A stretch of 64,000 nt of DNA from Macrostomum lignano. Lineage: Eukaryota. The translations under genes were made by a program, and so were the position numbers. The notes beneath the pieces were generated by a model. It was not told the DNA's origin. It saw only the letters and a list, made by a program, of their open reading frames with translations, and ran no database searches. Location of the stretch: positions 1 through 64,000 of the forward strand of contig NIVC01001516.1 in the NCBI GenBank assembly GCA_002269645.1, read 5' to 3'. The first letter of the stretch is position 1, and the number at the start of each line of letters is the position of its first letter. Shown piece by piece: positions 1,641 to 61,954 of this stretch.

Positions 1641-2160
1641 ATGAACTCAGTAAAAACAAAATCATTATCTTATCGCCTCAAAAATTCAGCCAAGTATCTG
1701 TGCGGCCGAGTCAAATCGGTGCACGACGGCGACTCGTTGCGCATCATCCCGGAGACGAACGACGACGGCGACAGGGCGTCAGTTCGTGTCCGCCTGATGC
1801 AGATCGACGCGCCGGAGTTGAGCCAAGCTCACGGACGAGATTCTCGCAAAGCACTGGCCAGCAGGCTGCCGCGCGGTACCCGAGTCTGCGTGATCTCACC
1901 TGGTCGGGATTACTATCATCGAATACTTGGATTTGTCTGTCTAGCTAAAGACGACATCGCCTACCGGATGCTGGCCGAAGGACACGCCTGGTGCTACCAC
2001 AACACCTGCAACTTGCGGTACAAAGCAGCCACCAGCGCTGCCAGGGTCGCAGGGCTCGGTCCTGTGGACGCCCGGACAGACGCCAATGGCTCCGTGGGCT
2101 TATCGTCGGTTTCAGCGGAGACGCGCCAGAAAGCACCGACAGCAAGGAAAGAAAGAATGA
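1641..2160 (+). CDS. Thermonuclease / staphylococcal nuclease-like protein (stand-alone bacterial-type SNase), one +1 frameshift at ~2061
   Basis: SNase motifs VHDGDSL, VRLMQIDAPE, GRDYYHRILG, MLAEGHAW. Removing one C from ggt-cc-tgtgg (2058-2067) restores the typical C-terminus GLWTPGQTPMAPWAYRR, ending at TGA 2158-2160 (~172 aa). Intronless. Confidence 0.8.
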
Positions 2161-2718
2161 GGGGCAAGAGCTGGAATGCAACTGTAGCTTTTGGGATGAT
2201 GCCTTTGATTTACAGCTTCAATAATACAACAATAAAAACAATAAGGGTGATAGGAGCAATCGTGTGTCCTAATGAATTTCCATTTACCAACACGTAATAT
2301 GATATATGATTATTACACACCAAATCATGTTACGCTGAAGCAGTGTCTGACACTATTTTTTCGTGCATCGTAGTGAGTCCAGTGTCCAGCAGTAAACAAA
2401 CCAGCTCAATACGCTAAAAATAAAGAACTTCTAAAATTTAAAGCGCCCTATAATGTGTCTGTCTACTAAATAATGAGTTACTAAGTAGTATGTTACGCTA
2501 ATGTAGACAGATAAATTACGATCGAATTTCCGTTTTTCAACGCAATAGCATTCAAATAGCCTGACTTATTAATGATAGTATCAAACGATACTTTCTCCTT
2601 TTTTCGTTATTTTGAAAAGAACGATAGGGTACTCGACGGTACGCTCGTATGAGTAAATTAAAAGGGCAGTGGCAGTACTACTAGCGTAGGGAATATGGAT
2701 CGTTTCTTCTATCATTAC

Positions 2719-8957: not shown

Positions 8958-11501
8958 CTAAGAAGCGTCGACTCGATTTCGGCACCACTTTGTCCACATC
9001 TTTTTTATTTGTTGTTGATTCGCTTCGCTGTCGGATTCAGGGCTGGAGCTTTGGCTGCTGCTGATGTAGTCCAACTCAAATTCATCAGGCGTAGCTGATC
9101 TGAACGTTTTGTTGTCTCGACTGTCCACCATCTCGTTGGTATTGTGATTGGTAGGAATTGTGTCAGCGGCAGGAAAATTTGACCTACCTGCAGATGTAGA
9201 CGGTGCAGTCCGTTCGCGTGGCAGCTCTGCGCAACTTCCTGTGTCTACGTGTACCTCAATAGGAGAAGCAGAGCTGCTTTCATCCGTCTGTTTATCTTCA
9301 TCGCAGTCGGAAACTAAAATACTTCCAACTTCCATAGTTGCGCCGTTTAAGTTGTGAATGTAACTATTATTTAACACGGTGGTTGGGTCTGTAAAAAGTA
9401 GTTCCCTTCTGTCTTTTGGATTGTCACAAGTCGTATGATTCGCAGCGGCAGCTGCTGGTTGACTACTTTGCCGATAGCTATTATTAAAGGCATCAAATTC
9501 AGCGGAAACTCCAAACTTAATTAGGTCTGCATCATCAAGTTCGTTGTCAACCGGCGCAGTTTGTGAGTCGATGACGAATGAAAAGCCTGCGTCATTATTA
9601 TTACTGGCGGAACTGCGGGACGAAAGCTTTTCCTCTCTAGAACCTAGCACTTCAAATATGACGCGTCCACTGTCTTCGGTAGTTACATGTACCTCTTCTG
9701 GTTGGGCAGTCTTGTTTGCTGCAGAAAAGTTGACCCGGTCTTGCTTCTCCTCATGGGCAGTTTTGTTTGCAGCAGAAAAGTTGATCAGCTGGTCTTGCCT
9801 CTCCTCATGGGCAGTTTTGTTTGCTGCAGAAAAGTCGATCAGATCTTGCTTCTCCTCATGGGCAGTTTTGTTTGCGGCAGAAAAGTCGATCAGGTCTTGC
9901 CTCTCCTCATGGGCAGTTTTGTTTGCAGCAGAAAAGTTGATCAGCTGGTCTTGCCTCTCCTCATGGGCAGTTTTGTTTGCAGCAGTAAAGTTGATCAGCT
10001 GGTCTTGCCTCTCCTTATGGGCAGTTTTGTTCGCAGCAGTAAAGTTGATCAGCTGGTCATGCCTCTCCTTATGGGCAGTTTTGTTTGCAGCAGAAAAGTT
10101 GATCAGCTGGTCTTGCCTCTCCTCATGGGCAGTTTTGTTTGCTGCAGAAAAGTCGATCAGATCTTGCTTCTCCTCATGGGCAGTTTTGTTTGCGGCAGAA
10201 AAGTCGATCAGGTCTTGCCTCTCCTCATGGGCAGTTTTGTTTGCGGCAGAAAAGGCGATCAGGTCTTGCCTCTCCTCATGTGCAGTTTTGTTTGCTGCAG
10301 AGAAGTCGATCAGATCTTGCTTCTCCTTATGGGCAGTTTTGTTTGCGGCAGAAAAGTCGATCAGGTCTTGCCTCTCCTCATGGACAGTTTTGTTTGCAGC
10401 AGTAAAGTTGATCAGCTGGTCTTGCTTCTCCTCATGGGCAGTTTTGTTTGCGGCAGAAAAGGCGATCAGGTCTTGCCTCTCCTCATGTGCAGTTTTGTTT
10501 GCTGCAGAGAAGTCGATCAGGTCTTGCCTCTCCTCCATTTCGTACACATAGCTGTCGCTGTCATCGTCATCATGATCTAGTGATCCTCCTGATACATGGA
10601 ATTCGTGTATTTTCGCGGCACTGCTGCTACTAGACTCCTCAGCGATTTTACTGAGCATGAACTCGCGTCCATCTTCATCTCCCTGCCTTGTCACTTCAAG
10701 TGCTTGTACACGAGGAAAGTGACAATCAGCTGTGCAAACACGGCCAGGGCCTTCTATAGTGGGCGTAAAGCTGAACGTATGGTTAATAGGCATATCTATG
10801 GATATTTCGCTCTGCATTGCGACATCAAAGGCGATCACGAAGCACTTTCCAATATCATCGACCTCGTCGGAATAAACCATCACGTCAGATTCCAAGGCTG
10901 GATGAATATTGTTGTCCATTTCAGTTACCTTGCAGCTGTGAAGTGAGGCTTCGGAGTTGCTGTAAGAGTCTTCCGATTCGACTGCGTCAGTAGACAGTAC
11001 ATGAAACGATTCTGTTGTTTCTCTTCTAATTCGCTTTGGAATTCCTGAGCTGGAGTTGTGCAACCGAGACAGCGCAGACCGCGTTGTTGCTGTCGACGAG
11101 CCATCTTCCGTTTCTGGTGTCTCCCAGTCGCCGCTCGCTTGTTCCGTCAACTCCGGTAGTTGAAAATCAATTTGTTCAACGCCGCCATGCGGCTGCCTGA
11201 ACAGATCTCGAATTCTCCCGGCAGGATGTTGCCGCTGATACACGCTGACTGGCGCAGGCTTAGCGACGAATTTATTGGCGGTGTTAAACTGACTGTCAGC
11301 TTGATTTTCGCTATCTGTCTCTTCAGTCGAGCAGCTACCGTCGATTAGTACAGGTGACCATTCACAGGTGCTCTCATAGCATTCTGTCGTAGTTTCCATT
11401 ACAACTCTAGCGGCTCTAACTGAGCTGGCTTGAGAGGCTGTAGTAGAATTTTCGCTAAAGTCGCGCGAGTGCGAAATTTTTGATGCTGTAATTTGCCGCA
11501 T
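8958..11501 (-). CDS. 847-aa acidic, Ser-rich, likely disordered protein with 16 tandem 17/18-aa repeats (EERQDLIDFSAANKTAH)
   Basis: 2.5-kb stop-free ORF with long non-repetitive flanks; repeat-unit length variation is 51/54 bp (frame-preserving). No signal peptide and no recognisable domain. Confidence 0.7.
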   Translation of the reverse strand: MRQITASKISHSRDFSENSTTASQASSVRAARVVMETTTECYESTCEWSPVLIDGSCSTEETDSENQADSQFNTANKFVAKPAPVSVYQRQHPAGRIRDLFRQPHGGVEQIDFQLPELTEQASGDWETPETEDGSSTATTRSALSRLHNSSSGIPKRIRRETTESFHVLSTDAVESEDSYSNSEASLHSCKVTEMDNNIHPALESDVMVYSDEVDDIGKCFVIAFDVAMQSEISIDMPINHTFSFTPTIEGPGRVCTADCHFPRVQALEVTRQGDEDGREFMLSKIAEESSSSSAAKIHEFHVSGGSLDHDDDDSDSYVYEMEERQDLIDFSAANKTAHEERQDLIAFSAANKTAHEEKQDQLINFTAANKTVHEERQDLIDFSAANKTAHKEKQDLIDFSAANKTAHEERQDLIAFSAANKTAHEERQDLIDFSAANKTAHEEKQDLIDFSAANKTAHEERQDQLINFSAANKTAHKERHDQLINFTAANKTAHKERQDQLINFTAANKTAHEERQDQLINFSAANKTAHEERQDLIDFSAANKTAHEEKQDLIDFSAANKTAHEERQDQLINFSAANKTAHEEKQDRVNFSAANKTAQPEEVHVTTEDSGRVIFEVLGSREEKLSSRSSASNNNDAGFSFVIDSQTAPVDNELDDADLIKFGVSAEFDAFNNSYRQSSQPAAAAANHTTCDNPKDRRELLFTDPTTVLNNSYIHNLNGATMEVGSILVSDCDEDKQTDESSSASPIEVHVDTGSCAELPRERTAPSTSAGRSNFPAADTIPTNHNTNEMVDSRDNKTFRSATPDEFELDYISSSQSSSPESDSEANQQQIKKMWTKWCRNRVDAS
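9700..10537 (-). repeat. Coding minisatellite, 51/54-bp unit x16
   Basis: Units such as gggcagttttgtttgcggcagaaaagtcgatcaggtcttgcctctcctcat, counted from the translation. Confidence 0.95.
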
Positions 11502-12755
11502 ATTCTTTTTTCTTATGAATTAGGAAAATTCGATTCTGGCTTTTTAAAATTGCTCATGTAAAACGCACGTATTTATTAAAATTAAAATGAGGCTATTCCA
11601 ATACAATGTATAAATTGTCTGTGGTAGTTTCATAAATGAAACTGCATGGCTATCGAGTACTATGTGACGATTAACCGGGAGACTCGAAATCAACTGACGA
11701 AAACAAATACAGCAGAGGCAAATTTTGTAGCAGTAGCACTTGATGATAGTAGCGAATGATGCGGGCGGTGGCCGCAGTTCTTATTTATTGTAAACCGTAT
11801 GAGTGGATAGTTAGGGCGAATTATCAATTCTGTCTGGGTAGTTAATAGAGATGGGCCGGAGTATTTGCTGAATCCGTAAGGGACGCACTGGGCGGCTACG
11901 CAACAATAAGATAGATGATAGATGATAGAGCGAGTCGATGAGCCTGAGGCAATGCAATGGCGACGATGTGATGGCAGTGATCGTGTGGTGGCGGTACTCG
12001 TAGCGAGACAGACGGTACAGACGGTAATGGTGGCGTGATCGAGAATTGGCGGTGGCGGTGGTGTGACTGAGACTTGGCAGAGGCGCGGTTTAGAACTGTG
12101 GCGGAGCGAGAAGACGGGTAAACAAGTAAACAATTAGGGTCTAACCCCCAGCCAGACAGGCCCCCAGCGGAAAAACCAACGTTGATTCAACGTTGTTGCC
12201 CTCCGTTGGCCCTCCGTTGGGCGTGTCTGGAGGAAAATCCGTTGATACAACGGCGGTTTACCAACGGCAGTCCAACTGCGAATCAACGCTATTCCAACGG
12301 TCAAAATATTGTTAGAGGTGCTGATCCACGTGAAATAAAGTATGAAAAAAGCCAATTTTCGCAATCAAATGTGTCATGTCACTCATGTGTCCAAAAACGT
12401 TACATTTTAAAGTTGAGACATTTGGCAAAGATCTATATATTTGTCAAATGAAATTACAGCAAAGCAAAAAAATTTCTCGCATGCATACGCGTTTAAAGTC
12501 TCAGGGTTAGGTATAAGTGTAATCATTGGCAATTATTGCAAACTAAATTACTTGTTTATAGGATGATATGATGGCTTTAACAACGTTTTTTATAAATCAT
12601 TTCTTTATTTTTGAATAATAACTAACTGACTGTGTCCAATGATTGTACTGCACATAAGCTAAGTAGCTAAATTGACACAACATACGATCAATATCCCATT
12701 CTAGCCTGCTGATTATCTCAAATTGTACTGCTCACAGGTTACGACTCCAAACCAG

Positions 12756-13158
12756 TCACTCATCACTGTCAGCGTCGTAAATGATAGGGTCAGGGACCTT
12801 CTGAACGGAACGTCGAACCTTGGCAGGCGGAGGGTCTTGCGATGTGCCAACTCTGGCTGCCGACGCCTGGCTGCCTGACTCCGTCGGACCTTGACGTCCA
12901 CGACTTCGCCCGTCCTTGCCCAGCTTCAGCGCAGCAATGACTGCAAGCTCTACATCGCGGTCTTTTGGACGCTCAGCAGCATCGCGGTACATTGCCTTCA
13001 TCGTCCCTAAAAGTATGTCACAAAAATACAATTATTAAACATAACTGATCTAAAACTAATAGGCCGTCTAATTTTAAAACCTATCAATACGTAAATCAAA
13101 TGAATTAAGAATCAGTATACTCAGTAATTAATTTCGATCATTGAATTTAATGTGATAT

Positions 13159-13200
<42 letters not shown>

Positions 13201-14772
13201 GCGCGCATTGAACTTACGTAGAATACTGGGCAAGAACACCGATCGAAAGGCAAGTTCGGTGTCCCCAAGCTCAGAGCCAGAGAGAGCACCAAGACCCTTT
13301 CCGTTATAATTGACAGCGGCCAGCATCTCTGGTGACAGAATTCGCCTCACCATTCGGCGAATGGTGCTGCCAAGGTCGTCAGCCTTGCAGGGCAGCAGCA
13401 GCCGTGTCATCTGCAAGGGTGCCAATAATTTTATCATACATGTAGATGGACAGTCACGAAGAAATATGGAATATTAATATGAAATAAAATGTGGAATATG
13501 TCAGAGACAATTATATTTTCCAACTATCGTGAAAGCATGCTGTCGGAGGCTTTTTGAAATAATAGACTTTGCAAAAACAAACACTAAACTATTGGATGTA
13601 CATACCCATTCGAGAGCCGGTGGATTTTTGATGAAGTCAATGTAGTCAGGCCAGGTCGCAATCGGCTTCCATTCTGCATCTGCATCAACTGGACCAAATG
13701 TAGTAGCAGCAGCAGCAGCGGCACGCGACATGCACTGCTTCAATTCTGAGATTGTTGTCATGCAAGCTGATGTCCGACGAAGGGTATGGAGCCCCAGGTA
13801 GCACAGTCCGAGAGGCGATGTCAGAGAGACTCCAAGCTTAGCCTCCATTCTAGCCTTCAGCAAGTCAAGCCCCCGGTACCGAAGTTCAATGACGCGACGT
13901 CAGCTGCAGCTGCATTGAAACGCAAGGCTCCTGGCTGATCCGAAGGGCTGAGCAACTCAGCCGCACTCTGCTGTGACCTGCACCTGTCGTTCTGTCCATG
14001 GTGGGGCAGTGATTTGGGCGTTTCCGGTGGAGCTGTTTCAACCGCTAGCTGAGCCGATGGGTTTCTTGTCTCCGGCAAAGGCAACAGCGGCAGCGAGCTT
14101 GGGCTTTGTTGAACTGCCCTGGCGGAATCCTCAGCTTGGGGTAGTCTAACCGACCGTGAGAAGCTTGAGGGCGATCGTTGGCAGTCAGACTCGGACTCGG
14201 TCTGCAGATTCTGAGAATGATTGCGCGCTACTTATAGTAACGTAGTTCGTGAGATCGATTGAATAATAATGACTAATGGTTACAAATGGTTAACATCTTT
14301 CGAAGTTTTAATACACACTTATAGCAACAAAAACGGTTTGTAGCTAACCTCCAAAGGAAGGAATCTTTGCCTCCTGCCATCGGGTACTCGTTTGACCAGT
14401 CCCAAAAGAGTTTGGATTTTGCAGTGCTTCTCGCGCCTGAACGCCCGAAGCCAATTTACCGTCCCAGTGGCGTCATAATCGTCGTCAGGGAGAACCTAGC
14501 GCAAATGCAAAATTACTTAGTGAAAATCAAAAATACCAAACGACCCCCATATACAAGTATGATTATGGGAACATTCAGGGAATAAAGCGTGCAGTTACCT
14601 GAAGAATTGTGCAGTCCCATACTTGCTCATTGTAGTATGCCCTTGCAATAGGCTCGCCAACAAAGTTTCGCCAGTTGTCCAGAGTGAATTTTTGGAAGTT
14701 TTCTAAGAGGACTTCAGTCTCGCTCAATTCGACTATTTCTTTGTCAACGTGAAAGATCACGATAAACTTCAT
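12756..14772 (-). CDS. Transposon accessory protein (DUF4806/BEN-like, TnpA-type), 5 predicted exons
   Basis: Exons 14772-14599, 14495-14349, 14210-13606, 13410-13218, 13006-12756 with GT-AG sites and consistent phases. Motifs GSTIRRMVRRILSPEMLAAVNYNGKG and VELAVIAALKLGKDGR. One unresolved frame change near 13860-13900. Confidence 0.65.
13160..13198. repeat. (CA)n microsatellite
   Basis: Pure CA run inside the last predicted intron of the accessory gene. Confidence 0.95.
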
Positions 14773-15078
14773 GGCTGAAATGAGAAATAGAAATACTCTT
14801 AATAATGGGAATATGTTGGAAATATATACATGACATGTTTGTGACATCAAATAAAGAAATTCATATTGTCTGAAACCAAAATAAAAAAATTGTTATTCAT
14901 ATTATATGTATATTTGTGTTTATATTTATAAACAAGCTGAACACACAAGGAGACATTTAATGCTACAAATAATGAAAAATGTACACTTGCACACCCTAGG
15001 ATGACAGTTGCATGAAAAAAGAAATTGCTATATTGACCAAGACTGACTTAGTACCAGAAGACAATAGTATAATCATAA

Positions 15079-16995
15079 TCAAATAGCGCAACAATAGGGA
15101 ATTACTATATATTCACCTCCAGATGATGGCAACAAGAAGCACTTTCTGCTTGCATTACCAGTAACAACATTACGTGTCACATGGTAAAATCCAATATTCA
15201 GAATTTCTGATGAATATGGACTTGTATACAAAGGATGCGAAAACTTTAACACATGACCAGTTAGGACATTTCCTACTACTGTACTAATGAGTATTGGAAC
15301 TCCATTTACAACTGCACAATTATTTGGAGACTTCTTAGAAAAAAACACAATACTAGCTGGATCACTTGTAAGAGTAGCACGGACATTAAAAAACTGGTGC
15401 AAAATATGCTTAGAAGCAAAGCGGGTAACTGAAATTCGTCTTTTAACATGCCCCAAATAGTTTTCGAAGTCAAATGCAGAAAAATTGTCAAGTTTTCCAT
15501 ATAGACAAACAAATTCATAAAGATGGAGCAAAGTGTGAGGGTTATAAGAAATTGATGCTTCACCATACAATGACTCCATTTCCTTAACAAAAATCTCAAT
15601 ACAACGATGAGCATTTGGTAAGAGAGTCTGGTGGACATCAGAGCAAAAAACATAGATAGAAAAGTGCAAGTGAAGAAAGTGGTCATAGTATTTTTGTGGT
15701 AAAAACTTTCTGAAGAAAAAAGGCCCCAAATATAGCAAAAAGAGTCGAAACTCAGTTGCTTTAAAGTGAGCTAAATTTGTATCAATACGGCGAGGCCTCC
15801 GCTGAAACTCAGCAGGAGTGAACTTGGCATAGCTATCAATAAAATCAGACAGCTCTTTTAACTTTAGTGCTGAAATCTTACAAGATGAACCAAACTTAGA
15901 TGAAAAAAGAAAATTAAAAACTTTTCTACAAACACCTAAACATACAGCATGTTGATAGTCAGGTGGAAAATGAGAATAAAAACCAATATTTTTAATACTC
16001 AGCAAAGGTGTTGAATGCCCTACCTTCTGGTTATTTTCTTTAGAATCAGCATAGCACTGATCAGTTCGCAAAGTACCAATAGAAGATGAAAAAACAATAC
16101 GATTAGCAAAATGTCTACCTTCAGCTTGACAATAACTACATCCCATGCGAGAGTTATGGTTCATAATAGAGCAGATATGAGCATGAGCAGGGGCATCACA
16201 AACAAAAAGAGCACGGACTAACTTAAAATGGTGGCCAAGAACTTGAATACCATTACTAAAAAAAATGTTTAGCTCTTCACAGAAGCGTGATAACAAAATA
16301 TTCAATGATGGTTTACTTTTACCAACAAAAATAGCAATGGGCAATGGACGCAAATAGCCTGATACTTTCATTAAAATTGGCCAAGCTGACATGGAAGAAC
16401 TATTATACAAGGGCATTCCATCTATATTGAAAATGGAATTTACTTTTATGTGCCCAGTTTCAGAATCAGCAATGCATTTTGAAAAGTCAAAATAATTATT
16501 GCTAACACAAAATTCCAAATTTTTGGCCATTGATACATAGAAAAAGTCTCCTTCAGTAGCAATAATAGAATAATAAGAAGAATTAGCAGAATGCTTTTTC
16601 AAGCCATATACAGACTTTGGAACTGAAATACCCTTGCGATTTAAAAAGGCAAGGATCCAAGCCATAGCAGAGCGTGACACATTAAAAAGTATATAAAATA
16701 GAAGCAGTTCTTGCTCAATTGTTAGCTCTGGCGTAGCATCTTCAACTTCAGGTATATCTTGATCCTCTTCTACAAGGTCTTCATCTGATTCACTATTATC
16801 CATTGGATTGCCCTGACTGTTGCCAAGAAAGTCAGTGTCGTATTCTTCAGCTTGAATGAATTCTTCATCTTGTTGATGATTATTGCCTTGGGCTTGATCT
16901 TGGTTAATGGGTTCAGATGCTTTTTGAAGCTGCTCTACTTCAATTTCCTCTAAACAACCCTGAAGCACTTTTCTAGCAAAGTTACGTTTGGACAT
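15079..16995 (-). CDS. EnSpm/CACTA-family DDE transposase, 638 aa, uninterrupted
   Basis: Motifs NIDGMPLY..SAWPIL, CDAPA..GCSYC, DYQHAVCLGV, FQRRPR, FKATEFRLFLLY, YNPHTLLHL, SAFDFENYLG. The ATG is directly preceded by an acceptor-like TTCAG. Confidence 0.9.
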   Translation of the reverse strand: MSKRNFARKVLQGCLEEIEVEQLQKASEPINQDQAQGNNHQQDEEFIQAEEYDTDFLGNSQGNPMDNSESDEDLVEEDQDIPEVEDATPELTIEQELLLFYILFNVSRSAMAWILAFLNRKGISVPKSVYGLKKHSANSSYYSIIATEGDFFYVSMAKNLEFCVSNNYFDFSKCIADSETGHIKVNSIFNIDGMPLYNSSSMSAWPILMKVSGYLRPLPIAIFVGKSKPSLNILLSRFCEELNIFFSNGIQVLGHHFKLVRALFVCDAPAHAHICSIMNHNSRMGCSYCQAEGRHFANRIVFSSSIGTLRTDQCYADSKENNQKVGHSTPLLSIKNIGFYSHFPPDYQHAVCLGVCRKVFNFLFSSKFGSSCKISALKLKELSDFIDSYAKFTPAEFQRRPRRIDTNLAHFKATEFRLFLLYLGPFFFRKFLPQKYYDHFLHLHFSIYVFCSDVHQTLLPNAHRCIEIFVKEMESLYGEASISYNPHTLLHLYEFVCLYGKLDNFSAFDFENYLGHVKRRISVTRFASKHILHQFFNVRATLTSDPASIVFFSKKSPNNCAVVNGVPILISTVVGNVLTGHVLKFSHPLYTSPYSSEILNIGFYHVTRNVVTGNASRKCFLLPSSGGEYIVIPYCCAI

Positions 16996-19880
16996 CTGAA
17001 AAATAATTCACAAGTAAAATCATTTATATCACAATATCTTATAGTAATTGGCAAATAATACTATACTATACTCATACTATATTTACCATGAATAATTATA
17101 AACAATTACATTCTTTTATTTCTATATATACCTGGCACTGCACAGGCACTAGCTAAAGCATATAAATATTTATAGCTAATATATATAGCTATGACATAGC
17201 TATAGTAATATGGCCTACAATACAAAATAGTTATACAAATATAGCAAATATATAACAAGGAAAACACAGCATCTACCTGGCATTTGAGGAATTGATCTAC
17301 ACACACATAGTAGCTAATAATTGATATGTTCCTAGGCTATAGCCCATAAAAGCCCTAAATAAAGTAAAGATATAGTGGGTTAAAGGTAAAGCTATATACT
17401 GTCATGCTTGCTGGGTTAAATTGCAAAGAACAATTAGGCATTGCACTTCTACTGTTGCCAAGCCATGTGTGTTGTGTACATTTATGCAACTAAAAAAAAG
17501 AAAAAACAATTTTGAAACATGCATAGCATGTGAGTTAATCATAATGACATAAAAAGATAGCTAGCCAGCTAATTCAAAAGTGAAGTTTGCAAAGGATCTG
17601 CAATACAAGCCATCCACAAAATAAAACACGTGAGCATGAAAATCGGAGGAAACTATATGCTAAACAGACCATCAAAATAACAAGTATGACAAAAATCCAC
17701 ATTCTCCTGCTCCAAACAGAAATTGCAAAACAATATTGGTACTATATAAAATAGACGTGCGTCGTGATGCTTTGCAACATATAAGTTTATCAAACCAATT
17801 TTGTCTACTAATTATTAACAAAAAACTGCACAGTAGTTGCCAAAAAGAAAACACTTTACATAATACGTACTGTGTAGAGCAAATCCAACTTAGTTCTAGA
17901 GTTATTACACAATTCCCTGACCTCAGTTTTACTCACAGTCTTTTTGGGAAATTTGGTTTACCGTTGAGAAACAACGGCAATTCAACGAAGAGCAATCACA
18001 ACGGTTTTACAACGGTTTCACAACGCACTTCAAAAAATGAAATATTGGCTCAGTAAGCAAAATAAAAGCTTTTTTAATTGCTTACGAGCCATTTTGGGTA
18101 CAAAGACAAACTTTTTTTGTTCCCAACGCTTTTGTGACATACCTCCGTTGAAACACCGTTGGATCAACGTTGTCTTTTCCACTGGGGGACTGATAAAGAC
18201 AGGGCTGGGGGTGGGTGCTCGAGGAGAGCTTAATTTCAGGCTAGCATAATTTATGCGCGGCTTTTGATCTATTGGCCGGCGAGAAAAAACCAACTTGAAA
18301 ACAGAAATTATCGATCGCATTGTACATAGGCTTTACAAACGCACGCAATATTGTTTAAAATTCTTTGGGCATTACTTTAAGCAGACGTTAAAGTACGAGA
18401 CCATTAAATTAACAATATAATACGTCGTAGATTAGCACTGCTTTCACTAAAACGGCCCTTGTCGGGGCTACCTCAACTGACAACGTCACCACTACATGTA
18501 AATCCACAAAATTTTCTTTCTTTGAGAAGTCCGAAGTTATATCCGTTGCAAGTGACAGCACGGGTTCCCAATTGTGGATCCTATTGTTGTTATACATGCA
18601 CATGCATGCGCTACATGTACATGTACGTAGGTACACATAACATGTAGATGCACATGTACAGCTATACCTATAGTAGTGCTGTGTGACGTTTCCTGAGACC
18701 AGAGGGATTCTTTCATTTCTTAATATCTATTCTCACTTGAATTCATGATGAGCTGAATATATGCAGGTTTTTGGTACATGTACATGTATTATGTAACATT
18801 AGTGCAAGTACATGTACGAGTGCCTCAGCTGCAATAGTAATCAATATAATGTGCATGTTCCCTCCTTTAATTATATAAATGCTGATCAACGTGAATAAAA
18901 AAATTGAATAAATTATAAGAAAACATTATAATGCTTTCATTATACAATACAAACAAGGGGACTGACTACTCAACTCCCGTATGAGTATTGAGTTGGTCCC
19001 TACCAACCTAGGTAAAAATAAAATGTATATTAACTTATACCGACCATTTTATACCGACCAGATGCTAAACTCGTTTTTCTCGTACTAATCAATTATTATT
19101 GCGCATCTACGTACTTCGGCATGTTCTCTGACATGCTCCATTATGCTTTTGACCGCTTTTGCTTTAAATACCGCAAAATTAATTTAAAATCGTGCAAATT
19201 CATGAAAGTTCAACAAATTCTCGATTGTATAACAAAAAATTATTATCATGCAGCAAACAAAAATATATAGATTAACTTGTATTGGCCAAACAGGCTGTTT
19301 AGCTCCTGTGGTTTAGCTTGAGCCATATTAGTACTACTTACTAATATGCAATAAAAGTTCTATTATTCTGTTCCATAACAATTAAGGACCACGTATCATT
19401 GATGTGATGAAAAAAGATTTTTTCTATCTCTGGAAGTGTATTTTTCAAGGAAATCGACCTCCTAAAAATTTACACGATCTTAGAGTTCGTGTGATTTTAT
19501 GTACAGTTGGGTCCCTGCCATAACTTTTGCACAAAAAGTATACCCAGACTAAAATAATCATAAAATAAGCGCTACAATAAATGAGCATGACAATTTTTTA
19601 CGCTGCAGTGCATTCGAAATTTATTTAATAAAAAACTAAGTACATTTGGAAAAATTAAAAAAGCATTTTTATTGTTAATTCTTGTACTTCTTTTGTAATT
19701 TTTGTTTTTTCTTCTTTACGTGGGTTTTCGATAATTTAAATGGCGAGATCGACGCACAAATTTTCTAATTTTTGCGCATTTTTTATTTTTAGAAACTTTG
19801 TTGGTTAAGATTCTTTTGTTAAAAAGTCATTTAATGCTTAAGGTCTAGAATAAATTGTTTGCTTCATCGAAAAAAAGTCA

Positions 19881-22800
19881 ATGGCGCAGCCTATACCCAT
19901 AAAATTTCAGGAGCATTTTCAAGTAAGTATTTTGAAACATTAAACAACAATTTGTTTTGTTCACTGAATCATGCGATTTAATTTGTACAATTTTACTGGG
20001 ATTTCGTTTGTGCTTTTTAAAATCTATCACTATTCACATTTTAAGAGTTTCTGTATGTAGAATATAATCATTTCCTTTGCCTTCAACTTAGATATTTCTT
20101 GTGTGCAAAAATAATGCTTGCTTATTAGTTATTTTTCACTTTTTAGACAGCTAGTCAAATACAATATCGATACTTCAAAATTTCCTTAATCATACTATCA
20201 TAGCCTGCGAAAATTAGTATTAAAAATCATCTTTAAACTGTAGGGCCAAATCTAGGACTAGGGAAAGGTCTGTAAAAGCTTAATTTAATTATGCCTTTAT
20301 ATTTTTTAAAAGATTGCATTTTGTAAAAACCAAGTATTATAATAAAGTATCAGAATTGGTTTCAACCCATTTGGCAAATTAATTTTTAGTAAAAGTCAAT
20401 AAAGACAAAAATACTTTAGTTTCACAGTGACCATTTGTCTAAAGCTAGTAATTATATCAAATAATTTGTTAAGATTGACTAGGCCTCAATGAAGAGTTTA
20501 AAAAATTCAAAATGAAAAAAAGAAACTTTATAATAGACTATAAAGATATTATATAGTTATATCTGCAAGCAAGCAAGATTTTCATTTTTAGTATAATAAT
20601 AAGATATATAACAAAATATGTTGTTGCTACGAAGAGCTTGCGTGCACGGCAGCCATTCACGTAAGCTCAGAATTGCGTGCACGGCGGCTATCTACCTAGT
20701 GCTTTATTTGCATGTATGCAGCCGTACACCTAGTGTTGTAATTGCGTGCACGGCAGCCGGCAATTGGCCGGGACTGGGGCCCTTAAATCCACGCATTGGC
20801 ATTGGCAAACCTAATTAAAAAATATTTTTACTATATTGTTTTATAATGTTTTATCCCCCATACACCATGGACTGCAAATGTAATCTTAATTAATTGTTTT
20901 TTTGTTAACTTGAATATTAATTCGAATAGTATATGACTTACTGTATAAGCCTATAAGATATAGCTCTGCCGTGCACGCAATTCTGAGCTTACGTGAACGG
21001 CGGCCGTGCACGCAAGCTCTTCGTTGTTGCTACAACAGAAGTTATTATAATTGTAAATTATTGCAAGTTTTTTTCTAGGAAAGTCATTCCTTTCAAAAGC
21101 ATTATCGCCATTTCAATCAAAGGGTGAAAAAGTTTAGTTACAAGCAAGGTAAAACCATAAATACAAAAAGAATAAAATATTTAATTAATTTCTTATTTAG
21201 TAAGCAACTACACTCAGGAAGGTATACATTATGGCAAAAACTTCTGGCGCACATCAATGAAAAATATGTGCGAAATGGCGCACACGGCGCACAACAAAGG
21301 CTTAGCAGAAGTTTTTAGTGCACAGTTGCGCACAGCAAAACCTGATCAGAAAAATTTAGCTCACAATGAGTCACCTAAATGTATAATCTGCATATGCAGT
21401 GTGTAAAATATGCTTTAAGATTACGTTTTCCAAGCATATCAATAAAAATTGTTGTATCTTGGTAAGTGAAACGAATAATAAAATTCAAAATGGGATTTTA
21501 CCATTAAGACTAAATTAACATTAAGTTAAAGCTATTTCTTTTGAGAATTTTCTATGTGAGCTAAAAAAAGCAAAAGTTTTGAGTTAAAAAAAGCCTACAT
21601 AAGGTACGAAAATTTATCCGTTTTTTTAGTTTTGTTTTAATTGGACTTTTACCGAGTTTTTAGTGCTACGGCGCATTAGTTAGCTATGTATTTGTCAATA
21701 AACAAATGTATACCTCGGCGCACAAATTCATATTTTAGCTTCGCACACAGCGCACACCAAAAATATGCTGAAAAATGTTCCCGCGCACACGTGACACTTT
21801 CCTGAGTATGGGTAAGCAATGCAATATATTATAAACATGAATAGTATAAAAATGTCAAATTTCTTTAAGTTTAGGCATTTGCTACTACTACCTTGGCCAA
21901 ACTAATTCAATTTGCTTAGAGGCAAAATGGTCTATGCCCATGGCCAAAACAATCTATGGGTAAAATAGTCTATAGGAAAGTGGTCTAAAGACAAAATGTC
22001 CATGGTCTAAATTTTTTATGGCAAAACAACTAATTACCCTTTTTATTCAATGTCAATTTTATTATTCAATTAATAGAATTTTTAGATGCCATTCTATTAT
22101 AGTGGGATGTCAAAATATAATTTAGGAACTAGAACTGAAAAACCACTTTATCATTCCTAATCTATCAATTGCACTTTGCATATGCACAATATAGCTATTA
22201 GCTAAGTCATGAGTTTTTAAATTTACTAATTGAAAAGGCAAGTCAAGTCAATGAATAATTTATTAAACCTAAAAAGGCCTATAATCACCAATGTGGTATA
22301 TTTGCAATTATAAATAGCTTATCTTTTTACCAAAGTAGTCATTTTCTTTTGCCAAAAATATGTTTTAATAAACTAAAAATTCACTTTTGTTTAAGTGTCT
22401 TTTGCAAAAAATTCCTTTGCCTAAATGGGCTGCACTTTCAGAATTAGGATATCAATGATATTTAAATTTGGGTATTAGACTCTTTGCAGCTATTGGTGAT
22501 TTTTAAAAAGGGTATTAGATTGGTACTTTTTACCAATACTTTTTTGAACATTGTGCCTAGCACTATATTTAATAATACACTATAAATAAAAACCAATGCT
22601 ATATTTAGCTCTACAAGTTTTCTAATCATAGCAGAAACTAACAATTTTGGATCTATGCCATGTCAATGTGGTATGTGTCAAACTTCTAGTTCTATATTTT
22701 CACATAGTTACTTATGAATTCTAAAACAATTGAACATATAGTCAAACCATAAGCTATGCTAATAGTCATTTTTTATTACTAAATTGGCAATTTGCAAATC

Positions 22801-25800
22801 AAGGCAATCTAGCAAGTTTCTTTTAAAATTACTTTATAAGTTAAATGGCCTCCTAACCTAAGAAATGCATGCTTCCTTGGTTATTAGACTGATGCAAATT
22901 GCAGTAGAGCTGAAGATACACAAATTCCATTTAGTGCTACAAATTGGCAAGAAAGATGACATGATCAAAGCATAAGAACAACCATGAGAGTACTATGTCC
23001 TACAAACTGGCTTTCTAAGCATATGGGTAGACTTTTATCTTAAGGGCCAGATAAAGAATCCAGCTTATGGCTAAGGGGCAGATGAGAGTGGAAAGAAAGA
23101 ATAGACAATTCAAAAAGAAAGGAGAGGCAACAGAGGGGATAAAAGAAAAGAAAGAAAATAATAGGAGAGATAAGAAGGTGAGGACAATAAGAGAGAGAGG
23201 GGGAGAAGAAGGTAGAGAGGAAAAGTGAGATGAGAGAAGAAAGAGTAGAGAGGAGAAAGAGAGTAAATACATGAAAGAGCAGAGAGCCATAGGAGAGAGA
23301 AGTAGAGAAAAGAGAAGAAAGAGGTGAAAGGGAAGAGAAGAAAGAAGAGAGGAAACAGTAAGAGAAGATAAAAGTTTCAAAGGATCCAAGGGATGTAAGG
23401 AAAGTCAAAGGCAAAGGCCAAAGCTTGTCAATATATGTTTTAGAGTCAGATAGAATTGCTTGACATTCAATCCTTGACATTCAGCACCCCAGCCAATAAT
23501 ATCAAATGTTTGCTTCAAACTCCACTTTATATTTACCTATATCCTACTAACTATTAAAAAGTTTTTGATTGAGTATGGCCTCAGACTTCAGAATATATGC
23601 AAAATAGTTCCAGGGATTGGAATTCCCTAGGTTCAAAATCTATCAGTTTCAATAGCTTGTACAAATATAAATCTAAAAACAAGGAATAATAGTTATAGAA
23701 AAAACTTTTTTGTAAAGATTTGTATAATTTATTTTCCCACTTGGTATTATGCAAAATATGCTTTTTTATATATGCTATACATTAATGCTTTTTATATATG
23801 CTATTATACATTGTGCTGTCTATGTTAGGCAGTGTAGACTCTGTAGAGCTTGACCACTTTCTGTTACACTGCATTAGGTAGTGTGATGCTAGACTTACTT
23901 TCTGCACTAGAATTTCCTACAAAAAGGCCACCTTCCTGACTATGGCAATTACCCCTGTAAGTTATTATCAAGACTAATGATGGCCTAAACTAAGTTTATA
24001 GATTTTATTGTATTGTATTTTGGTAATTGTGTTATCATTTTGTTAATATTTTGTTTTAGTTCCAGTTACACATTTTGGCACCAATTTGAATTTAATGTGC
24101 ACATCTACAGTTATGCTAGTTAGGTATATGGAATTTCTATTATCTTAGACAAGGCCAAAACAACTAAAATATTTGATGTTTCAAAAAGTAAAGTTCTGTG
24201 GGACTTCTACCAGTTTCTATGCTTTTGGAGCCTAACATTTGGAATCCCAGGTCCTCAGCTTGCTTTTCAATGTTTTAATTGATAACAATTAAATTATAAA
24301 GTAATCTATTCAGAACTTCTCTACAATGACTTTATTATTGTTATTGTTATTATATTATTAGGGCAAGCATTTATTTTATTGAGCTTTATACCCTTATCCT
24401 ATATATGAAGTCCTAAGTAGCTAAAAAGTTTAGAATAACTTTTTTTAGCCAAACCTTTTTAACATCAGAGCAAAGAAAAGAGGGACTGTTGTATGAAAAG
24501 TAACTTAGGATAGCAAATAGCTACTTTGTATAGTAGATAAGGATGGGTATTATTAGCATAGATTGATGCTGATAAAAATGAGAATAAGTACTTTTATTTT
24601 CCTTTGGCTTACTTGGCTGACATTATGTGTAAGTTCGATGCTTGATTTGTCCTTGCCTTTCATGTTCTAAGTCGCACAAGTGTTTCTGTTTGATGCCTCA
24701 ATTGCAAATAATTCGAACTCATTTTTATTCAACCCAGCTGCAAAACATCGGCATCAACAATGCCAGCATCGGGTTCTCCACCCTCACCATGGAGTCGGAT
24801 CGGTTCATCTGCATCCGAGAGAAAGTTGGCGAAACCGCCCAAGTAGTGATTGTGGACATGAACGATCACAATAATCCTACTAGGCGGCCAATATCGGCCG
24901 ATAGTGCCATCATGAATCCCGTTAGCAAAGTGATCGCGCTGAAGGCCGGCAAGAGTTTGCAAATATTCAACATCGAATTGAAATCGAAAATCAAATCGCA
25001 CGCCATGACCGAAGAGGTCACCTTCTGGCGTTGGATTACTGTCAATACTATCGCTTTAGTGACGGAGACGGCCGCTTATCATTGGAGTCTGGAGGGCGAT
25101 TCGACTCCAGTGAAGATGTTCGATAGGCATGCCTCGCTGTCCGGCTGTCAGATAATTAACTACAGGTGCGACAATAGCCAGAAATGGCTGCTAATCATAG
25201 GCATATCGGCCCAGCAGAATCGCGTGGCTGGAGCTATGCAGCTGTATAGCGTCGAGCGCCGCGTCTCCCAGCCAATAGAAGGCCACGCCGGCGTGTTTAT
25301 GGAATTCCGCGTCGAAGCCAATGCCCAGCCGTCTAATCTGTTCTGCTTCGCCAATAGAGGCCTGCAGGGAGCCAAGCTGCACATTATTGAAGTTGGCCAG
25401 CCACCGTCTGGCAATCAGCCCTATCCGAAGAAGCAGGTAGATCTGTTCTTCCCACCCGAGGCCACTTCGGATTTTCCCGTTGCTATGCAAGCCTCTTCTA
25501 AGCACGGCGTTATCTACATGGTCACTAAGTACGGCTATATTCACCTGTACGACTTGGACACGGCCACCTGTCTCTATATGAACCGGATCAGTAGCGAGAC
25601 TATTTTTGTCACCGTACCGCACGAAGCCAGCGGCGGTATAATGGGCGTTAATAGGAAAGGCCAAGTGCTCAGTGTCAGCATGGATGAGGACAATGTTATC
25701 GGTTAGTTTGAATCTGTTTTTAAACTGTTTAGCTCTTTAGGCATTCGAGTGGTTGGCGGTAATTTTATAATAAAACAGTTTTTTGCGACGGTCACCTTAA

Positions 25801-34800: not shown

Positions 34801-35118
34801 CAAGGAGCACCTGGAGCTGTTCTGGTCCCGCATCAACATTCCCAAGGTGCTGCGCGCCGCCGAGCAGGCCCACCTGTGGTCCGAACTCGTGTTTCTATAC
34901 GAGAAATATGAAGAATTCGATAATGCCATACTCACTATGATGAAGCATCCCACCGAGGCCTGGCGAGAGTCCTTCTTTAAGGAGATGATCTCCAAGTGCG
35001 CTAATATCGAAATCTATTACAAGGCTATAAAGTTCTATCTGGACTTTAAGCCTCTGCTGCTCAATGACCTGCTGCAGGTGAGTCCGCCTGTAATGAATTT
35101 CATGTCTTTCTGTCTGTC

Positions 35119-35163
<45 letters not shown>

Positions 35164-52311: not shown

Positions 52312-53195
52312 TTGACAATTTTACGCTCTACTCGAGTGCACAATACACCCCGTAGATACGCATATTATACATTTTTGGAAAATTGTAAAGTACTCGTACA
52401 ACAGTGTTAAAGTGTCCCCCATTAGTGGCTGCCTGCTAGATAGAGGTGCAAAATGCACCAGCGAAAACTCCATTCAACTAAAAGCATGGGTGAATGTTTC
52501 ATTCCTCTTGGAAAACAGATCATCCACTTTTCAGTTATTAGTCAAACTAAACTCATATCCACGTTGACATCCGGTGTAAGCCTACACAAAGAGCAGAATT
52601 AAAGTGCACAAAGTGCTAAACTGCACCTATAACCATAGCAATAGAATCAGAATCCAATTATCCAGTAACACACACCATTGGGGCAGAGCGGCTCAGTATG
52701 AGGGCTTGTATGTGCTCAAAAGTCAGTATAATTAGGCAGAGAATTGCCCCAGCGCTGGTTGTGGGACAATGTCCCCTGTAGGACAAAGATTTACTGTGTT
52801 TTAGTTAGTCCCGCACTTATTTGCCTCGGTCACGGAGCAGGAGCTTGATTGATCGGCGGCTATAAATTCAACCCAAACTGCAATAAGCTTCTCTATTTAT
52901 TTCTATTCCCATGTAGGTCTCTCAAATGATCCCCGTATATTTTTTCTCATTTCTCCCTATTTCAATCGCTATGGCGCCTCGCTGAAGTGGCTGCTCAGCT
53001 TATTCGTCCACTCAGATCCAGGCTTCTGTAGACTGAATGCCCATTGCTGCCAGCCCTGCGCCTCGCTTGAGCCTCTGCTGTTTTTATGAATGACTTCCTA
53101 TTGAGCTCTGGGAGCCTGCTCATTTCATCCTTCATCTCTGTTGTTTCTCCCTCTCCGTTTATTCAAAGTCAGGTCAATCCATCAGCTAACTCTCA

Positions 53196-54550: not shown

Positions 54551-54989
54551 CAGATCTATAGGTTTCCATGAGTTTGGCAATCTATCTGTACTTAGTTTAA
54601 AGTAAAAAAATGCACTATTGCCTAGTCCAGTGGAGCGTGAACTAACGCCATACATAGATCTATAAATATTCTTGTTATTTTCTGTTTCGAGTGCTCGCAC
54701 GAAAGTGACAAGCCGGGGCCACAAGGCTTGAAGTCTCCGTCTTAGATAGTCCAATTTAAATGAGGTTATTTGCTGTTATTACCATAAGCCCACTTGCAAC
54801 CTTTATAAACAGTTGGTGGATCAGCTGTTGTGTTCCCACTGTCTCTGCTTACTTGAGAAGGTAGGAATGGCTGTCTAAGTCTAGCACAGCTTATAATTGC
54901 TTCATACGCAAGTAAATACCGGTATCTTATAATAGCAAGTAAATACTCCTTATCCTTATATAAAGACCCTTGCATGAATGCGAAGTATC

Positions 54990-57116: not shown

Positions 57117-57158
57117 AATTGCAGTGCCCCACGTATTGCAGTGCCCCATCTGGTTGCC

Positions 57159-61954
<4,796 letters not shown>

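What the first reader, a model, noticed from the sequence alone, without database searches (positions are those of the whole stretch)
8958..11501. Orphan disordered protein with 16 tandem clathrin-box-like motifs
Seen: most repeats carry L-I-[D/N/A]-F-[S/T], preceded by acidic residues (EERQDLIDFS). The 17-aa units also fit the acidic dileucine pattern E-x-x-x-L-I, and unit indels preserve frame. DADLIKF and EFDAF occur downstream. Known: the clathrin box is L[LI][DEN][LF][DE], and adaptors such as epsin/AP180 use multiple short motifs in disordered arms. Inference: a lineage-specific multivalent clathrin/AP-binding scaffold in which Ser/Thr at position 5 could act as a phospho-switch. The missing acidic fifth residue makes this unproven.
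Basis: partly seen in the sequence, partly recalled or inferred. Interest (0 to 1): 0.7.

Follow-up and report, generated by a model that had tools for sequence, protein, structure and literature searches.

The report
Orphan flatworm repeat protein, LIDF motifs
This is a real, annotated but uncharacterised gene found only in the flatworm Macrostomum lignano; its middle third is a recently expanded DNA repeat that copies one short clathrin-box-like motif 15 times, and nothing I could run shows that it binds clathrin.

Summary
Window 8958-11501 (-) is an 847-codon ORF in Macrostomum lignano contig NIVC01001516.1, annotated as hypothetical protein Mlig023022.g1. Residues 323-599 are 16 tandem units of 17 or 18 aa. 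Fifteen units carry L-I-[D/N/A]-F-[S/T] and one carries RVNFS.

The units are about 90% identical at DNA level, and the window holds 17 strong minisatellite arrays. So the 16 motifs are one motif amplified recently, not 16 independently conserved sites.

Only one paralogue was found, 98% identical over the N-terminal 325 aa, among 1.84 billion representative proteins. The two copies differ by 15 nonsynonymous and 2 synonymous changes. The neighbouring clathrin exon shows 0 and 2.

The protein has no signal peptide, no membrane segment and no recognisable domain. AlphaFold gives very low confidence outside a helix-prone array.

No unit matches the canonical clathrin box. However, LIDF cores without an acidic fifth residue do bind clathrin in ACK1 and GTSE1, so the reading stays possible. 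No other adaptor motifs occur, and the dileucine spacing fails in the 18-aa units. My AlphaFold docking test was spoiled by alignment contamination.

The clathrin heavy-chain gene is the head-to-head neighbour, which is curious but not evidence of function. Verdict: an ordinary fast-evolving orphan repeat protein, with clathrin binding untested.

The parts
8958..11501 (-). Complete single-exon ORF, 847 aa plus stop. This is the locus of annotated gene BOX15_Mlig023022g1 of Macrostomum lignano.
   Evidence: An in-frame TAA lies 7 codons upstream of the ATG. The chance that the 570 flank codons stay open is about 1e-13.
10536..11501 (-). N-terminal flank, aa 1-322. It is acidic (net charge -32), 22% Ser+Thr, has no signal peptide and is predicted unstructured.
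   Evidence: The only homologue is paralogue P0001.
11022..11039 (-). PKRIRR (aa 155-160), the only K[KR]x[KR] site in the protein. It resembles a classical monopartite nuclear localisation signal.
   Evidence: for the pattern. The nuclear-signal reading is from general knowledge and is untested.
9705..10535 (-). Coding minisatellite, aa 323-599: 16 units of 51 or 54 nt encoding AANKTAHEE[RK]QD(Q)LI[D/N/A]F[S/T]. It carries 15 LIxF cores and 16 NKT sequons.
   Evidence: It is modelled as helices 326-411, 440-542 and 560-578.
8961..9704 (-). C-terminal flank, aa 600-847. It is acidic (net charge -22), Ser/Thr-rich and predicted unstructured except for the last 22 residues.
9486..9533 (-). DADLIKFGVSAEFDAF (aa 657-672). 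It holds one more L-phi-x-phi core (LIKF-G, the same shape as ACK1 LIDFG) and EFDAF. Both are identical in the paralogue.
8964..9029 (-). C-terminal basic helix (aa 825-846, ...QQQIKKMWTKWCRNRVDA). It is the best-predicted part of the protein and contains WTKW.
   Evidence: (pLDDT up to 78).
19881..19922 (+). Exon 1 of the neighbouring clathrin heavy-chain gene ([20 protein letters not shown] donor), arranged head-to-head with the target gene.
   Evidence: The same arrangement occurs in the paralogous locus, with ATG-to-ATG about 2.36 kb.
24738..25701 (+). Exon 2 of clathrin heavy chain, encoding most of the N-terminal beta-propeller that binds clathrin boxes.
   Evidence: Clathrin_propel, E = 5e-46. 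Also.

Best explanation
A young, fast-evolving, transcribed gene restricted to Macrostomum lignano (or its close relatives). It encodes a non-secreted, strongly acidic protein that is mostly unstructured.

Its central third is an in-frame 51/54-nt minisatellite. The array was built and is still being reshuffled by slippage and unequal exchange, in a genome where such arrays are abundant. The 15 LI[D/N/A]F[S/T] 'motifs' are therefore one pentapeptide copied by DNA amplification, not a set of independently selected clathrin boxes.

Shown: the anatomy, the recent origin and turnover of the units, the weak protein-level constraint, and the absence of homologues and domains.

Inferred: the array serves, if anything, as a helix-prone, charged module that sets length or valency. 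Its hydrophobic LIxF patches could give weak multivalent binding to some partner. Clathrin's terminal domain is one candidate, not the default.
For: Identity and transcript support:
- The window is identical to contig NIVC01001516.1. The gene is annotated there as Mlig023022.g1, and paralogue Mlig023020.g3 is 98% identical over the N-terminal 325 aa, with the C-terminal flank about 97%.
- That annotation was built only from RNA-seq and transcript assemblies (PMC5730564), so a transcript exists.

Recent amplification:
- Units are 90% identical at DNA level, with a 156-nt higher-order period.
- The 14 variable columns fall 4/4/6 over the three codon positions.
- The two paralogues each have 16 units, but they share only 5 of 19 distinct DNA unit types, in a different order.
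- The 64-kb window holds 17 strong minisatellite arrays.

Weak constraint:
- The paralogues' flanks differ by 15 nonsynonymous and 2 synonymous changes. Under a dN/dS of about 0.15 that split has P = 9e-6; under neutrality P = 0.25.
- Clathrin exon 2 between the same two loci shows 0 nonsynonymous and 2 synonymous changes.

Orphan status:
- phmmer of aa 1-325 against 1.84e9 representatives finds only the paralogue.
- There are no PDB or NCBIfam hits.
- The only Pfam hit above its cut-off is Zein, which lies on the array.

Protein properties:
- The highest 19-residue hydrophobicity is 1.24, so there is no signal peptide or membrane segment.
- AlphaFold mean pLDDT is 36, and helices are predicted only in the array and the last 22 residues.
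Against: - The ORF flanks are more alike between paralogues (about 1% different) than the adjacent non-coding DNA (5.5-8.5% different including gaps, 2.9-4.2% by mismatches). Some constraint or gene conversion therefore acts on the gene.
- L, I and F are kept in 15 of 16 units in both paralogues while the 'x' position varies (D/N/A). That is the pattern a real L-phi-x-phi motif would show.
- Both arrays have exactly 16 units.
- LIDF is a proven clathrin-binding core elsewhere (PMC3038647, PMC7041688).
- I found no expression site, no orthologue and no experiment for this gene, so the functional part of the statement is inference.
Confidence: 0.55

Rival explanations
1. One reading: the array is a multivalent binder of the clathrin heavy-chain N-terminal propeller. 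It would use non-canonical LI[D/N]F boxes like those of GTSE1 and ACK1. The gene would encode a lineage-specific clathrin-associated scaffold, possibly regulated by phosphorylation of the S/T after the F.
For: - ACK1 LIDFG binds the terminal domain without an acidic fifth residue (PMC3038647).
- GTSE1 has five LI[DQ][LF] motifs in 75 disordered residues. LIDF is seen in site 1 and LIDL-SSP in site 3 of crystal structures (PMC7041688).
- The target has 15 LIxF cores preceded by acidic residues, plus LIKFG downstream, and has no signal peptide or membrane segment.
- The M. lignano terminal domain keeps Q89, F91, K96, K98, Q152, I154, R188 and Q192, with T87 changed to S.
- L, I and F are invariant and position 3 varies, in both paralogues.
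- The clathrin heavy-chain gene is the head-to-head neighbour in both paralogous loci.
Against: - No unit matches L-phi-x-phi-[DE].
- The copies are recent duplicates, so their number is not evidence of selection.
- LINF and LIAF variants have no precedent that I found.
- The array is predicted helical rather than extended.
- None of DPF, DPW, NPF, FxDxF or DLL is present, and there is no ENTH, ANTH, BAR or PTB-type domain.
- Short-motif pattern matches are mostly false positives (general knowledge).
- Gene adjacency in animals rarely reflects function.
- The S/T context F-[ST]-A-A-N has no acidic +3 residue.
Confidence: 0.15
2. The ORF is transcribed but has no selected function. It would be a de novo or decaying gene sitting in open chromatin upstream of a strongly expressed housekeeping gene (clathrin heavy chain), and its minisatellite happens to have a period divisible by three.
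For: - The dN/dS estimate between paralogues is about 2 and is not distinguishable from neutrality (P = 0.25).
- No homologues exist outside the species.
- No domain was found and AlphaFold confidence is very low.
- The gene is arranged head-to-head with clathrin heavy chain, 2.36 kb apart before a transposon insertion.
- Several other arrays in the window also have periods divisible by three.
Against: - An 847-codon ORF cannot arise or persist by chance (P about 1e-13 for the flanks alone). It was therefore shaped as coding sequence.
- Both paralogues keep it open and keep all units in frame.
- The ORF diverges less than its non-coding flanks.
Confidence: 0.2
3. A secreted, heavily N-glycosylated repeat protein. 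Every unit has an N-K-T sequon, and the LINF[ST] variants add a second one (N-F-[ST]).
For: There are 16 NKT sequons and 7 NF[ST] sequons in the array, and 30 N-x-[ST] in total.
Against: - There is no N-terminal hydrophobic segment; the maximum 19-residue hydrophobicity is 1.24, at aa 217.
- An in-frame stop lies 7 codons upstream of the ATG, so no hidden upstream coding exon is in phase without splicing.
- Both annotated models start at the same Met.
Confidence: 0.03
4. A nuclear multi-SIM-like scaffold. D-L-I-D-F-S resembles SUMO-interacting motifs of the V-I-D-L-T type, as in the tandem SIMs of RNF4, and the protein has an NLS-like PKRIRR.
For: - The core is hydrophobic-hydrophobic-acidic-hydrophobic, followed by S/T and preceded by acidic residues.
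- There is a single K[KR]x[KR] site.
- The SIM consensus is recalled from general knowledge, so this is a lead only.
Against: - Position 4 is F, not V, I or L.
- N and A variants lose the acidic centre.
- There is no acidic or Ser run after the core.
- It has the same duplication caveat as the clathrin reading, and nothing was tested.
Confidence: 0.04

Closest known systems
GTSE1 C-terminal clathrin-binding region (five LI[DQ][LF] motifs; PMC7041688)
   Same: Several closely spaced LIDF/LIDL-type cores lie in a non-globular, non-membrane protein. Some lack an acidic fifth residue (LIDL-SSP). Binding there is multivalent.
   Different: - GTSE1 has 5 divergent motifs that are conserved across vertebrates and bind in extended form. 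Here there are 15 near-identical copies made by a recent minisatellite, in a helix-prone context.
- There is no sequence homology and no binding data.
ACK1/TNK2 non-conventional clathrin box LIDFG (PMC3038647)
   Same: The LIDF core is identical and is followed by a small non-acidic residue. LIKFG downstream of the array has the same shape.
   Different: ACK1 has one such box beside a canonical LLSVE, inside a kinase with defined domains. The target has no canonical box and no domain.
Endocytic adaptors with disordered motif arms (AP180/CALM, epsin, Eps15, amphiphysin)
   Same: An acidic, Ser/Thr-rich, low-complexity polypeptide with repeated short hydrophobic motifs.
   Different: Those proteins combine clathrin motifs with AP-2 appendage or EH-domain motifs (DPF/DPW, FxDxF, NPF, DLL) and a folded membrane- or cargo-binding domain. 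None of these is present here.
Taxonomically restricted, rapidly evolving genes of Macrostomum (PMC7336406) and coding minisatellites in general
   Same: - No detectable homologues outside the lineage.
- High protein divergence.
- An internal tandem repeat whose units are homogenised and reshuffled between recent paralogues.
   Different: Expression site and function are unknown for this gene. I could not find it in the gene lists of five M. lignano papers.

Membership tests
Canonical clathrin box (L-phi-x-phi-[DE], site 1 of the terminal domain) | Leu at position 1 and bulky hydrophobic residues at positions 2 and 4 | tested here: met
   LI.F is present in 15 of 16 units, and LIKF lies downstream. 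The same holds in the paralogue.
Canonical clathrin box (L-phi-x-phi-[DE], site 1 of the terminal domain) | Acidic residue at position 5 | tested here: not met
   There are 0 matches to L[IVLMF].[IVLMF][DE] in the whole protein. Position 5 is S or T, followed by A-A-N.
Canonical clathrin box (L-phi-x-phi-[DE], site 1 of the terminal domain) | Motif lies in an accessible, extended or disordered segment of a cytosolic protein | tested here: inconclusive
   There is no signal peptide or membrane segment. However, the array is modelled as long helices, at pLDDT 40-68 in single-sequence mode.
Non-canonical LIDF-type clathrin-binding motif (ACK1 LIDFG, GTSE1 LIDF/LIDL-S) | LIDF or LIDL core with a non-acidic fifth residue | tested here: met
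   Seven units read LIDFS. Precedents are in PMC3038647 and PMC7041688. The LINF and LIAF variants have no precedent that I found.
Non-canonical LIDF-type clathrin-binding motif (ACK1 LIDFG, GTSE1 LIDF/LIDL-S) | Direct binding to the clathrin heavy-chain terminal domain that is lost on mutating the L-I residues | not testable with these tools
   The AlphaFold fusion of M. lignano terminal domain with five units gave no docked segment. The alignment columns of the tail were contaminated by the homologues' own linker helices, so the result is void.
Non-canonical LIDF-type clathrin-binding motif (ACK1 LIDFG, GTSE1 LIDF/LIDL-S) | Conservation of the motif in orthologues | not testable with these tools
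   No orthologue was found. Only a paralogue 98% identical over the N-terminal 325 aa is available, and it is too close to be informative.
Acidic dileucine sorting signal [DE]xxxL[LI] (AP-2 sigma2-alpha) | Fixed spacing of the acidic residue four positions before L-[LI] | tested here: not met
   The spacing is present in 9 units only. It is broken by the Q insertion in the six 18-aa units and is lost in RVNFS.
Acidic dileucine sorting signal [DE]xxxL[LI] (AP-2 sigma2-alpha) | Located in the cytosolic tail of a transmembrane cargo | tested here: not met
   No hydrophobic segment is long enough for a membrane span.
Endocytic accessory or adaptor protein (epsin / AP180 / Eps15 type) | AP-2 appendage or EH-domain motifs (DPF/DPW, FxDxF, NPF, DLL) and a folded lipid- or cargo-binding domain | tested here: not met
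   There are 0 matches to each motif. Pfam finds no domain outside the array and the PDB sequence search finds none.
Zein seed-storage proteins (Pfam PF01559) | Homology beyond repeat composition, plus the plant secretory context | tested here: not met
   The hit (38.7 bits, above the 24.6 cut-off) lies only on the array, aa 341-473. There is no signal peptide and the host is a flatworm. I treat it as a periodic Q/L/A-composition artefact.
Secreted N-glycosylated repeat protein | N-terminal signal peptide | tested here: not met

The most novel reading that the evidence does not exclude
The array is a genuine, very high-valency (15-16 site) clathrin terminal-domain binder that arose recently by minisatellite expansion of a single LIDF box. 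It is encoded head-to-head with the clathrin heavy-chain gene itself. That would make it a newborn clathrin regulator or 'sponge' specific to Macrostomum, and a natural example of motif valency evolving by repeat expansion.
Probability: 0.12. Interest if true: 0.6.

Novelty: new member of a known kind. Interest (0 to 1): 0.3.

Why it matters
If the ordinary reading is right, this is one more lineage-restricted repeat protein in a genome full of minisatellites. Its use is mainly cautionary: tandem duplication can make a short-motif match look sixteen times stronger than it is.

If the clathrin reading were right, it would show short-motif valency being created almost instantly by repeat expansion. 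It would also give M. lignano, where transgenesis and RNAi work, a tractable species-specific handle on clathrin function.

Tried and rejected
- **Homology searches.**
  - The whole protein found only two M. lignano entries.
  - The C-terminal 252 aa found nothing. That search did not even return the two known entries, so it is a weak null.
  - Exhaustive phmmer of the N-terminal 325 aa found only the paralogue.
  - PDB sequences and NCBIfam gave nothing.
- **Pfam.** The Zein hit was rejected as a repeat artefact. LLGL is below its cut-off.
- **AlphaFold fusion.** I fused the M. lignano clathrin terminal domain (aa 1-336) to target aa 301-401. I reject this result: MAFFT spread the homologues' linker helices over the tail columns, which probably drove the confident tail helix.
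- **Structure search.** I did not run fold search, because the full-length model has mean pLDDT 36 and matches would be meaningless.
- **Expression data.** The gene ids Mlig023022 and Mlig023020 do not occur in any main text, nor in the text-held supplements of PMC5730564, PMC5816591, PMC7336406, PMC12896417 and PMC5946080. Large tables may have been cut when stored.
- **Helix geometry.** The hydrophobic moment is low (0.03-0.27) and there is no heptad register. I therefore dropped the amphipathic lipid-binding helix and coiled-coil readings.
- **The 757-aa annotated model.** Its two gaps are not GT-AG introns, because the sense strand of the array has only two GT dinucleotides and both are in the wrong places. 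I treat the model as a collapsed or shorter-allele transcript.
- **+ strand ORFs.** The ORFs at 9544-10551 and 9687-10580 lie almost wholly within the array and are by-products of its periodicity.
- **RNA genes.** No tRNA or Rfam hit occurs in the window.
Full report
[quoted passage not shown] Window 1-21501 is 100% identical to the first 21.5 kb of contig NIVC01001516.1 of assembly GCA_002269645.1. The window is eukaryotic: ORFs are sparse, genes are spliced, and there are no tRNA or Rfam hits.

**The observation.** ORF 8958-11501 on the minus strand encodes 847 aa.
- Tandem Repeats Finder reports a 51-nt array at 9703-10535 with 16.0 copies and 90% matches. It also reports a higher-order 156-nt period of three units.
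- At protein level, aa 323-599 are 16 units reading AANKTAHEE[RK]QD(Q)LI[D/N/A]F[S/T].
- The cores are LIDFS x7, LIAFS x2, LINF[ST] x6 and RVNFS x1.
- Units are 51 or 54 nt, so the frame is kept.
- E-x-x-x-L-I holds only in the nine 17-aa-type units. The extra Gln in the 18-aa units shifts the spacing.

The description is therefore accurate.

**Is it a gene?**
- The 570 non-repeat codons would stay open by chance with P about 1e-13. The other two sense frames carry 33 and 76 stops.
- An in-frame TAA sits seven codons upstream of the ATG.
- The locus is annotated as Mlig023022.g1 (P0002), and paralogue Mlig023020.g3 (P0001, 850 aa) lies on another contig.
- That annotation was derived only from RNA-seq and transcript assemblies, with an expression threshold (PMC5730564). 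A transcript therefore exists.
- I could not find where the gene is expressed. The gene ids are absent from main texts and from the held supplements of five papers.
- The 757-aa annotated model omits two blocks of the array. Only two GT dinucleotides exist in the array's sense strand, at the wrong places. These gaps are therefore not canonical introns and probably reflect a collapsed or shorter-allele transcript.

**How it evolves.**
- Exhaustive phmmer of aa 1-325 against 1.84 billion representative proteins returns only the paralogue. The PDB and NCBIfam give nothing.
- The Pfam Zein hit lies wholly on the array and is a periodic-composition artefact.
- Between the two paralogues, the non-repeat flanks differ at 17 codons: 15 nonsynonymous and 2 synonymous. 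This is incompatible with strong purifying selection (P = 9e-6 under dN/dS of about 0.15) and compatible with neutrality (P = 0.25).
- As a control, clathrin exon 2 between the same two loci shows 2 synonymous and 0 nonsynonymous changes.
- The ORF is nevertheless less diverged (about 1%) than its non-coding flanks, which are 94.5% and 91.5% identical. Some constraint or gene conversion is therefore likely.
- Inside the array, variable columns are spread 4/4/6 over the codon positions.
- The two paralogues both have 16 units but share only 5 of 19 distinct DNA unit types, in a different order. The array is being reshuffled on the timescale of the recent genome duplication.
- The window contains 17 strong minisatellite arrays in 64 kb, so this kind of expansion is routine in this genome.

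The sixteen motif copies therefore count as roughly one observation.

**The protein.**
- There is no signal peptide or membrane span; the maximum 19-residue hydrophobicity is 1.24.
- Net charge is -32, -16 and -22 for the N flank, the array and the C flank. The two flanks are 22% Ser+Thr.
- Single-sequence AlphaFold gives mean pLDDT 36. It predicts no secondary structure in aa 1-325 or 600-824.
- The array is modelled as long helices at pLDDT 40-68. A better-predicted basic helix lies at aa 825-846.
- The array helix is only weakly amphipathic and has no heptad register.
- A single NLS-like PKRIRR lies at aa 155-160.

**Testing the clathrin reading.**

Against:
- No unit fits L-phi-x-phi-[DE].
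- None of DPF, DPW, NPF, FxDxF or DLL is present, and there is no folded adaptor domain.
- The dileucine reading fails on spacing and has no transmembrane context.
- The Ser/Thr after the Phe has no acidic +3 residue.

For:
- The literature shows that the acidic fifth residue is dispensable. ACK1 LIDFG is a 'nonconventional' box that binds the terminal domain (PMC3038647).
- GTSE1 carries five LI[DQ][LF] motifs. LIDF is seen in site 1 and LIDL-SSP in site 3 of crystal structures (PMC7041688).
- The M. lignano terminal domain, encoded in this same window, keeps Q89, F91, K96, K98, Q152, I154, R188 and Q192, with T87 changed to S.
- In both paralogues L, I and F are fixed while position 3 varies.

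A shuffled unit yields L[IL][DEN][LF] in about 0.16% of trials. That is uncommon, but unremarkable once every motif class and every repeat protein is allowed for.

**The docking attempt.** I fused the flatworm terminal domain (aa 1-336) to target aa 301-401, using an alignment of 34 clathrin homologues.
- The propeller was confident. The first LIDFS had pLDDT below 50, and the other four units formed one helix.
- On inspection, MAFFT had spread the homologues' own helical linker residues over the tail columns. Neither the helix confidence nor the lack of docking can be trusted.
- I count this test as void.

**The neighbour.**
- The clathrin heavy-chain gene lies head-to-head with the target. 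Its exon 1 is at 19881-19922 and its exon 2 at 24738-25701, with further Clathrin-repeat exons to about 36.4 kb.
- The paralogous locus has the same arrangement, with the two ATGs about 2.36 kb apart.
- In the window they are separated by a 6-kb insertion. It is bounded by 41-nt inverted repeats and carries a transposase-like ORF.
- The adjacency is striking. However, known clathrin partners are not normally encoded next to clathrin, so it barely discriminates between the models.
- It fits equally well with a young gene born from divergent transcription next to a strongly expressed gene. That idea is my inference.

**Verdict.**
- The feature is real and well described.
- The best-supported account is a fast-evolving orphan gene whose in-frame minisatellite multiplies one short hydrophobic motif.
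- Clathrin binding remains a legitimate hypothesis with real precedent for the LIDF core. It has no positive evidence here, and I put it at about 0.12-0.15.

Noticed in passing
window 19881-19922, 24738-25701, and further exons at 29002-29619, 34571-35224 and 35710-36372 (+): The clathrin heavy-chain gene itself is the divergent, head-to-head neighbour of the gene carrying the clathrin-box-like repeats. The same synteny is seen at the paralogous locus L001.
   Followed up: partly
window 12157-18192: A roughly 6-kb AT-rich insertion is absent from the paralogous locus. It is bounded by 41-nt inverted repeats (85% complementary). It carries a 638-aa ORF (15079-16995, -) with a 'VCDAPAHAH...HNSRMGCSYC' block and a weak DUF1258 hit. 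It looks like a DNA transposon with a tnp2/CACTA/KDZ-like transposase. A 228-aa annotated gene model also lies inside it.
   Followed up: partly
window 26805-28791, 49386-52310, 53188-54554, 54989-57116 and 13 other arrays: The window is packed with minisatellites. Examples are 36 nt x55 just downstream of clathrin exon 2 (apparently intronic), 21 nt x140 and 20 nt x107. This fits the reported 15% tandem-repeat content of the genome.
   Followed up: no
L001 about 2546 (equivalent to window 24840): The paralogous copy of clathrin exon 2 has a 1-nt deletion in a C run (CGCCCAAG versus CGCC-AAG). This is either a long-read assembly error or a frameshift in one clathrin paralogue.
   Followed up: no
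window 57141-57842 and 58266-59837 (+): These ORFs have Peptidase_S15 and PepX_C domains (CocE/NonD-type hydrolase). They lie in the most GC-rich part of the window (52-58%) and are flanked by minisatellites.
   Followed up: no
window 8958-11501, annotated model P0002: The deposited 757-aa model removes 18 and 72 aa from the array without GT-AG boundaries. The array is probably mis-modelled in the public annotation, or a shorter allele is transcribed.
   Followed up: partly
window 8964-9029 (aa 825-846): This is the only confidently predicted element outside the array: a basic Trp-containing helix (IKKMWTKWCRNR). WTKW resembles the core of the clathrin W-box (PWxxW) but lacks the Pro and the acidic context.
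   Followed up: no
window 1641-2297 (+) and 63109-63969 (-): An exon with a SNase (staphylococcal nuclease-like) domain and an ABC2_membrane transporter exon. The SNase gene is also syntenic at the paralogous locus.
   Followed up: no
tool behaviour: The word-indexed protein search with the C-terminal 252 aa did not return P0001 or P0002, although both contain that sequence almost exactly. Negative results from that tool on low-complexity queries are therefore weak.
   Followed up: no
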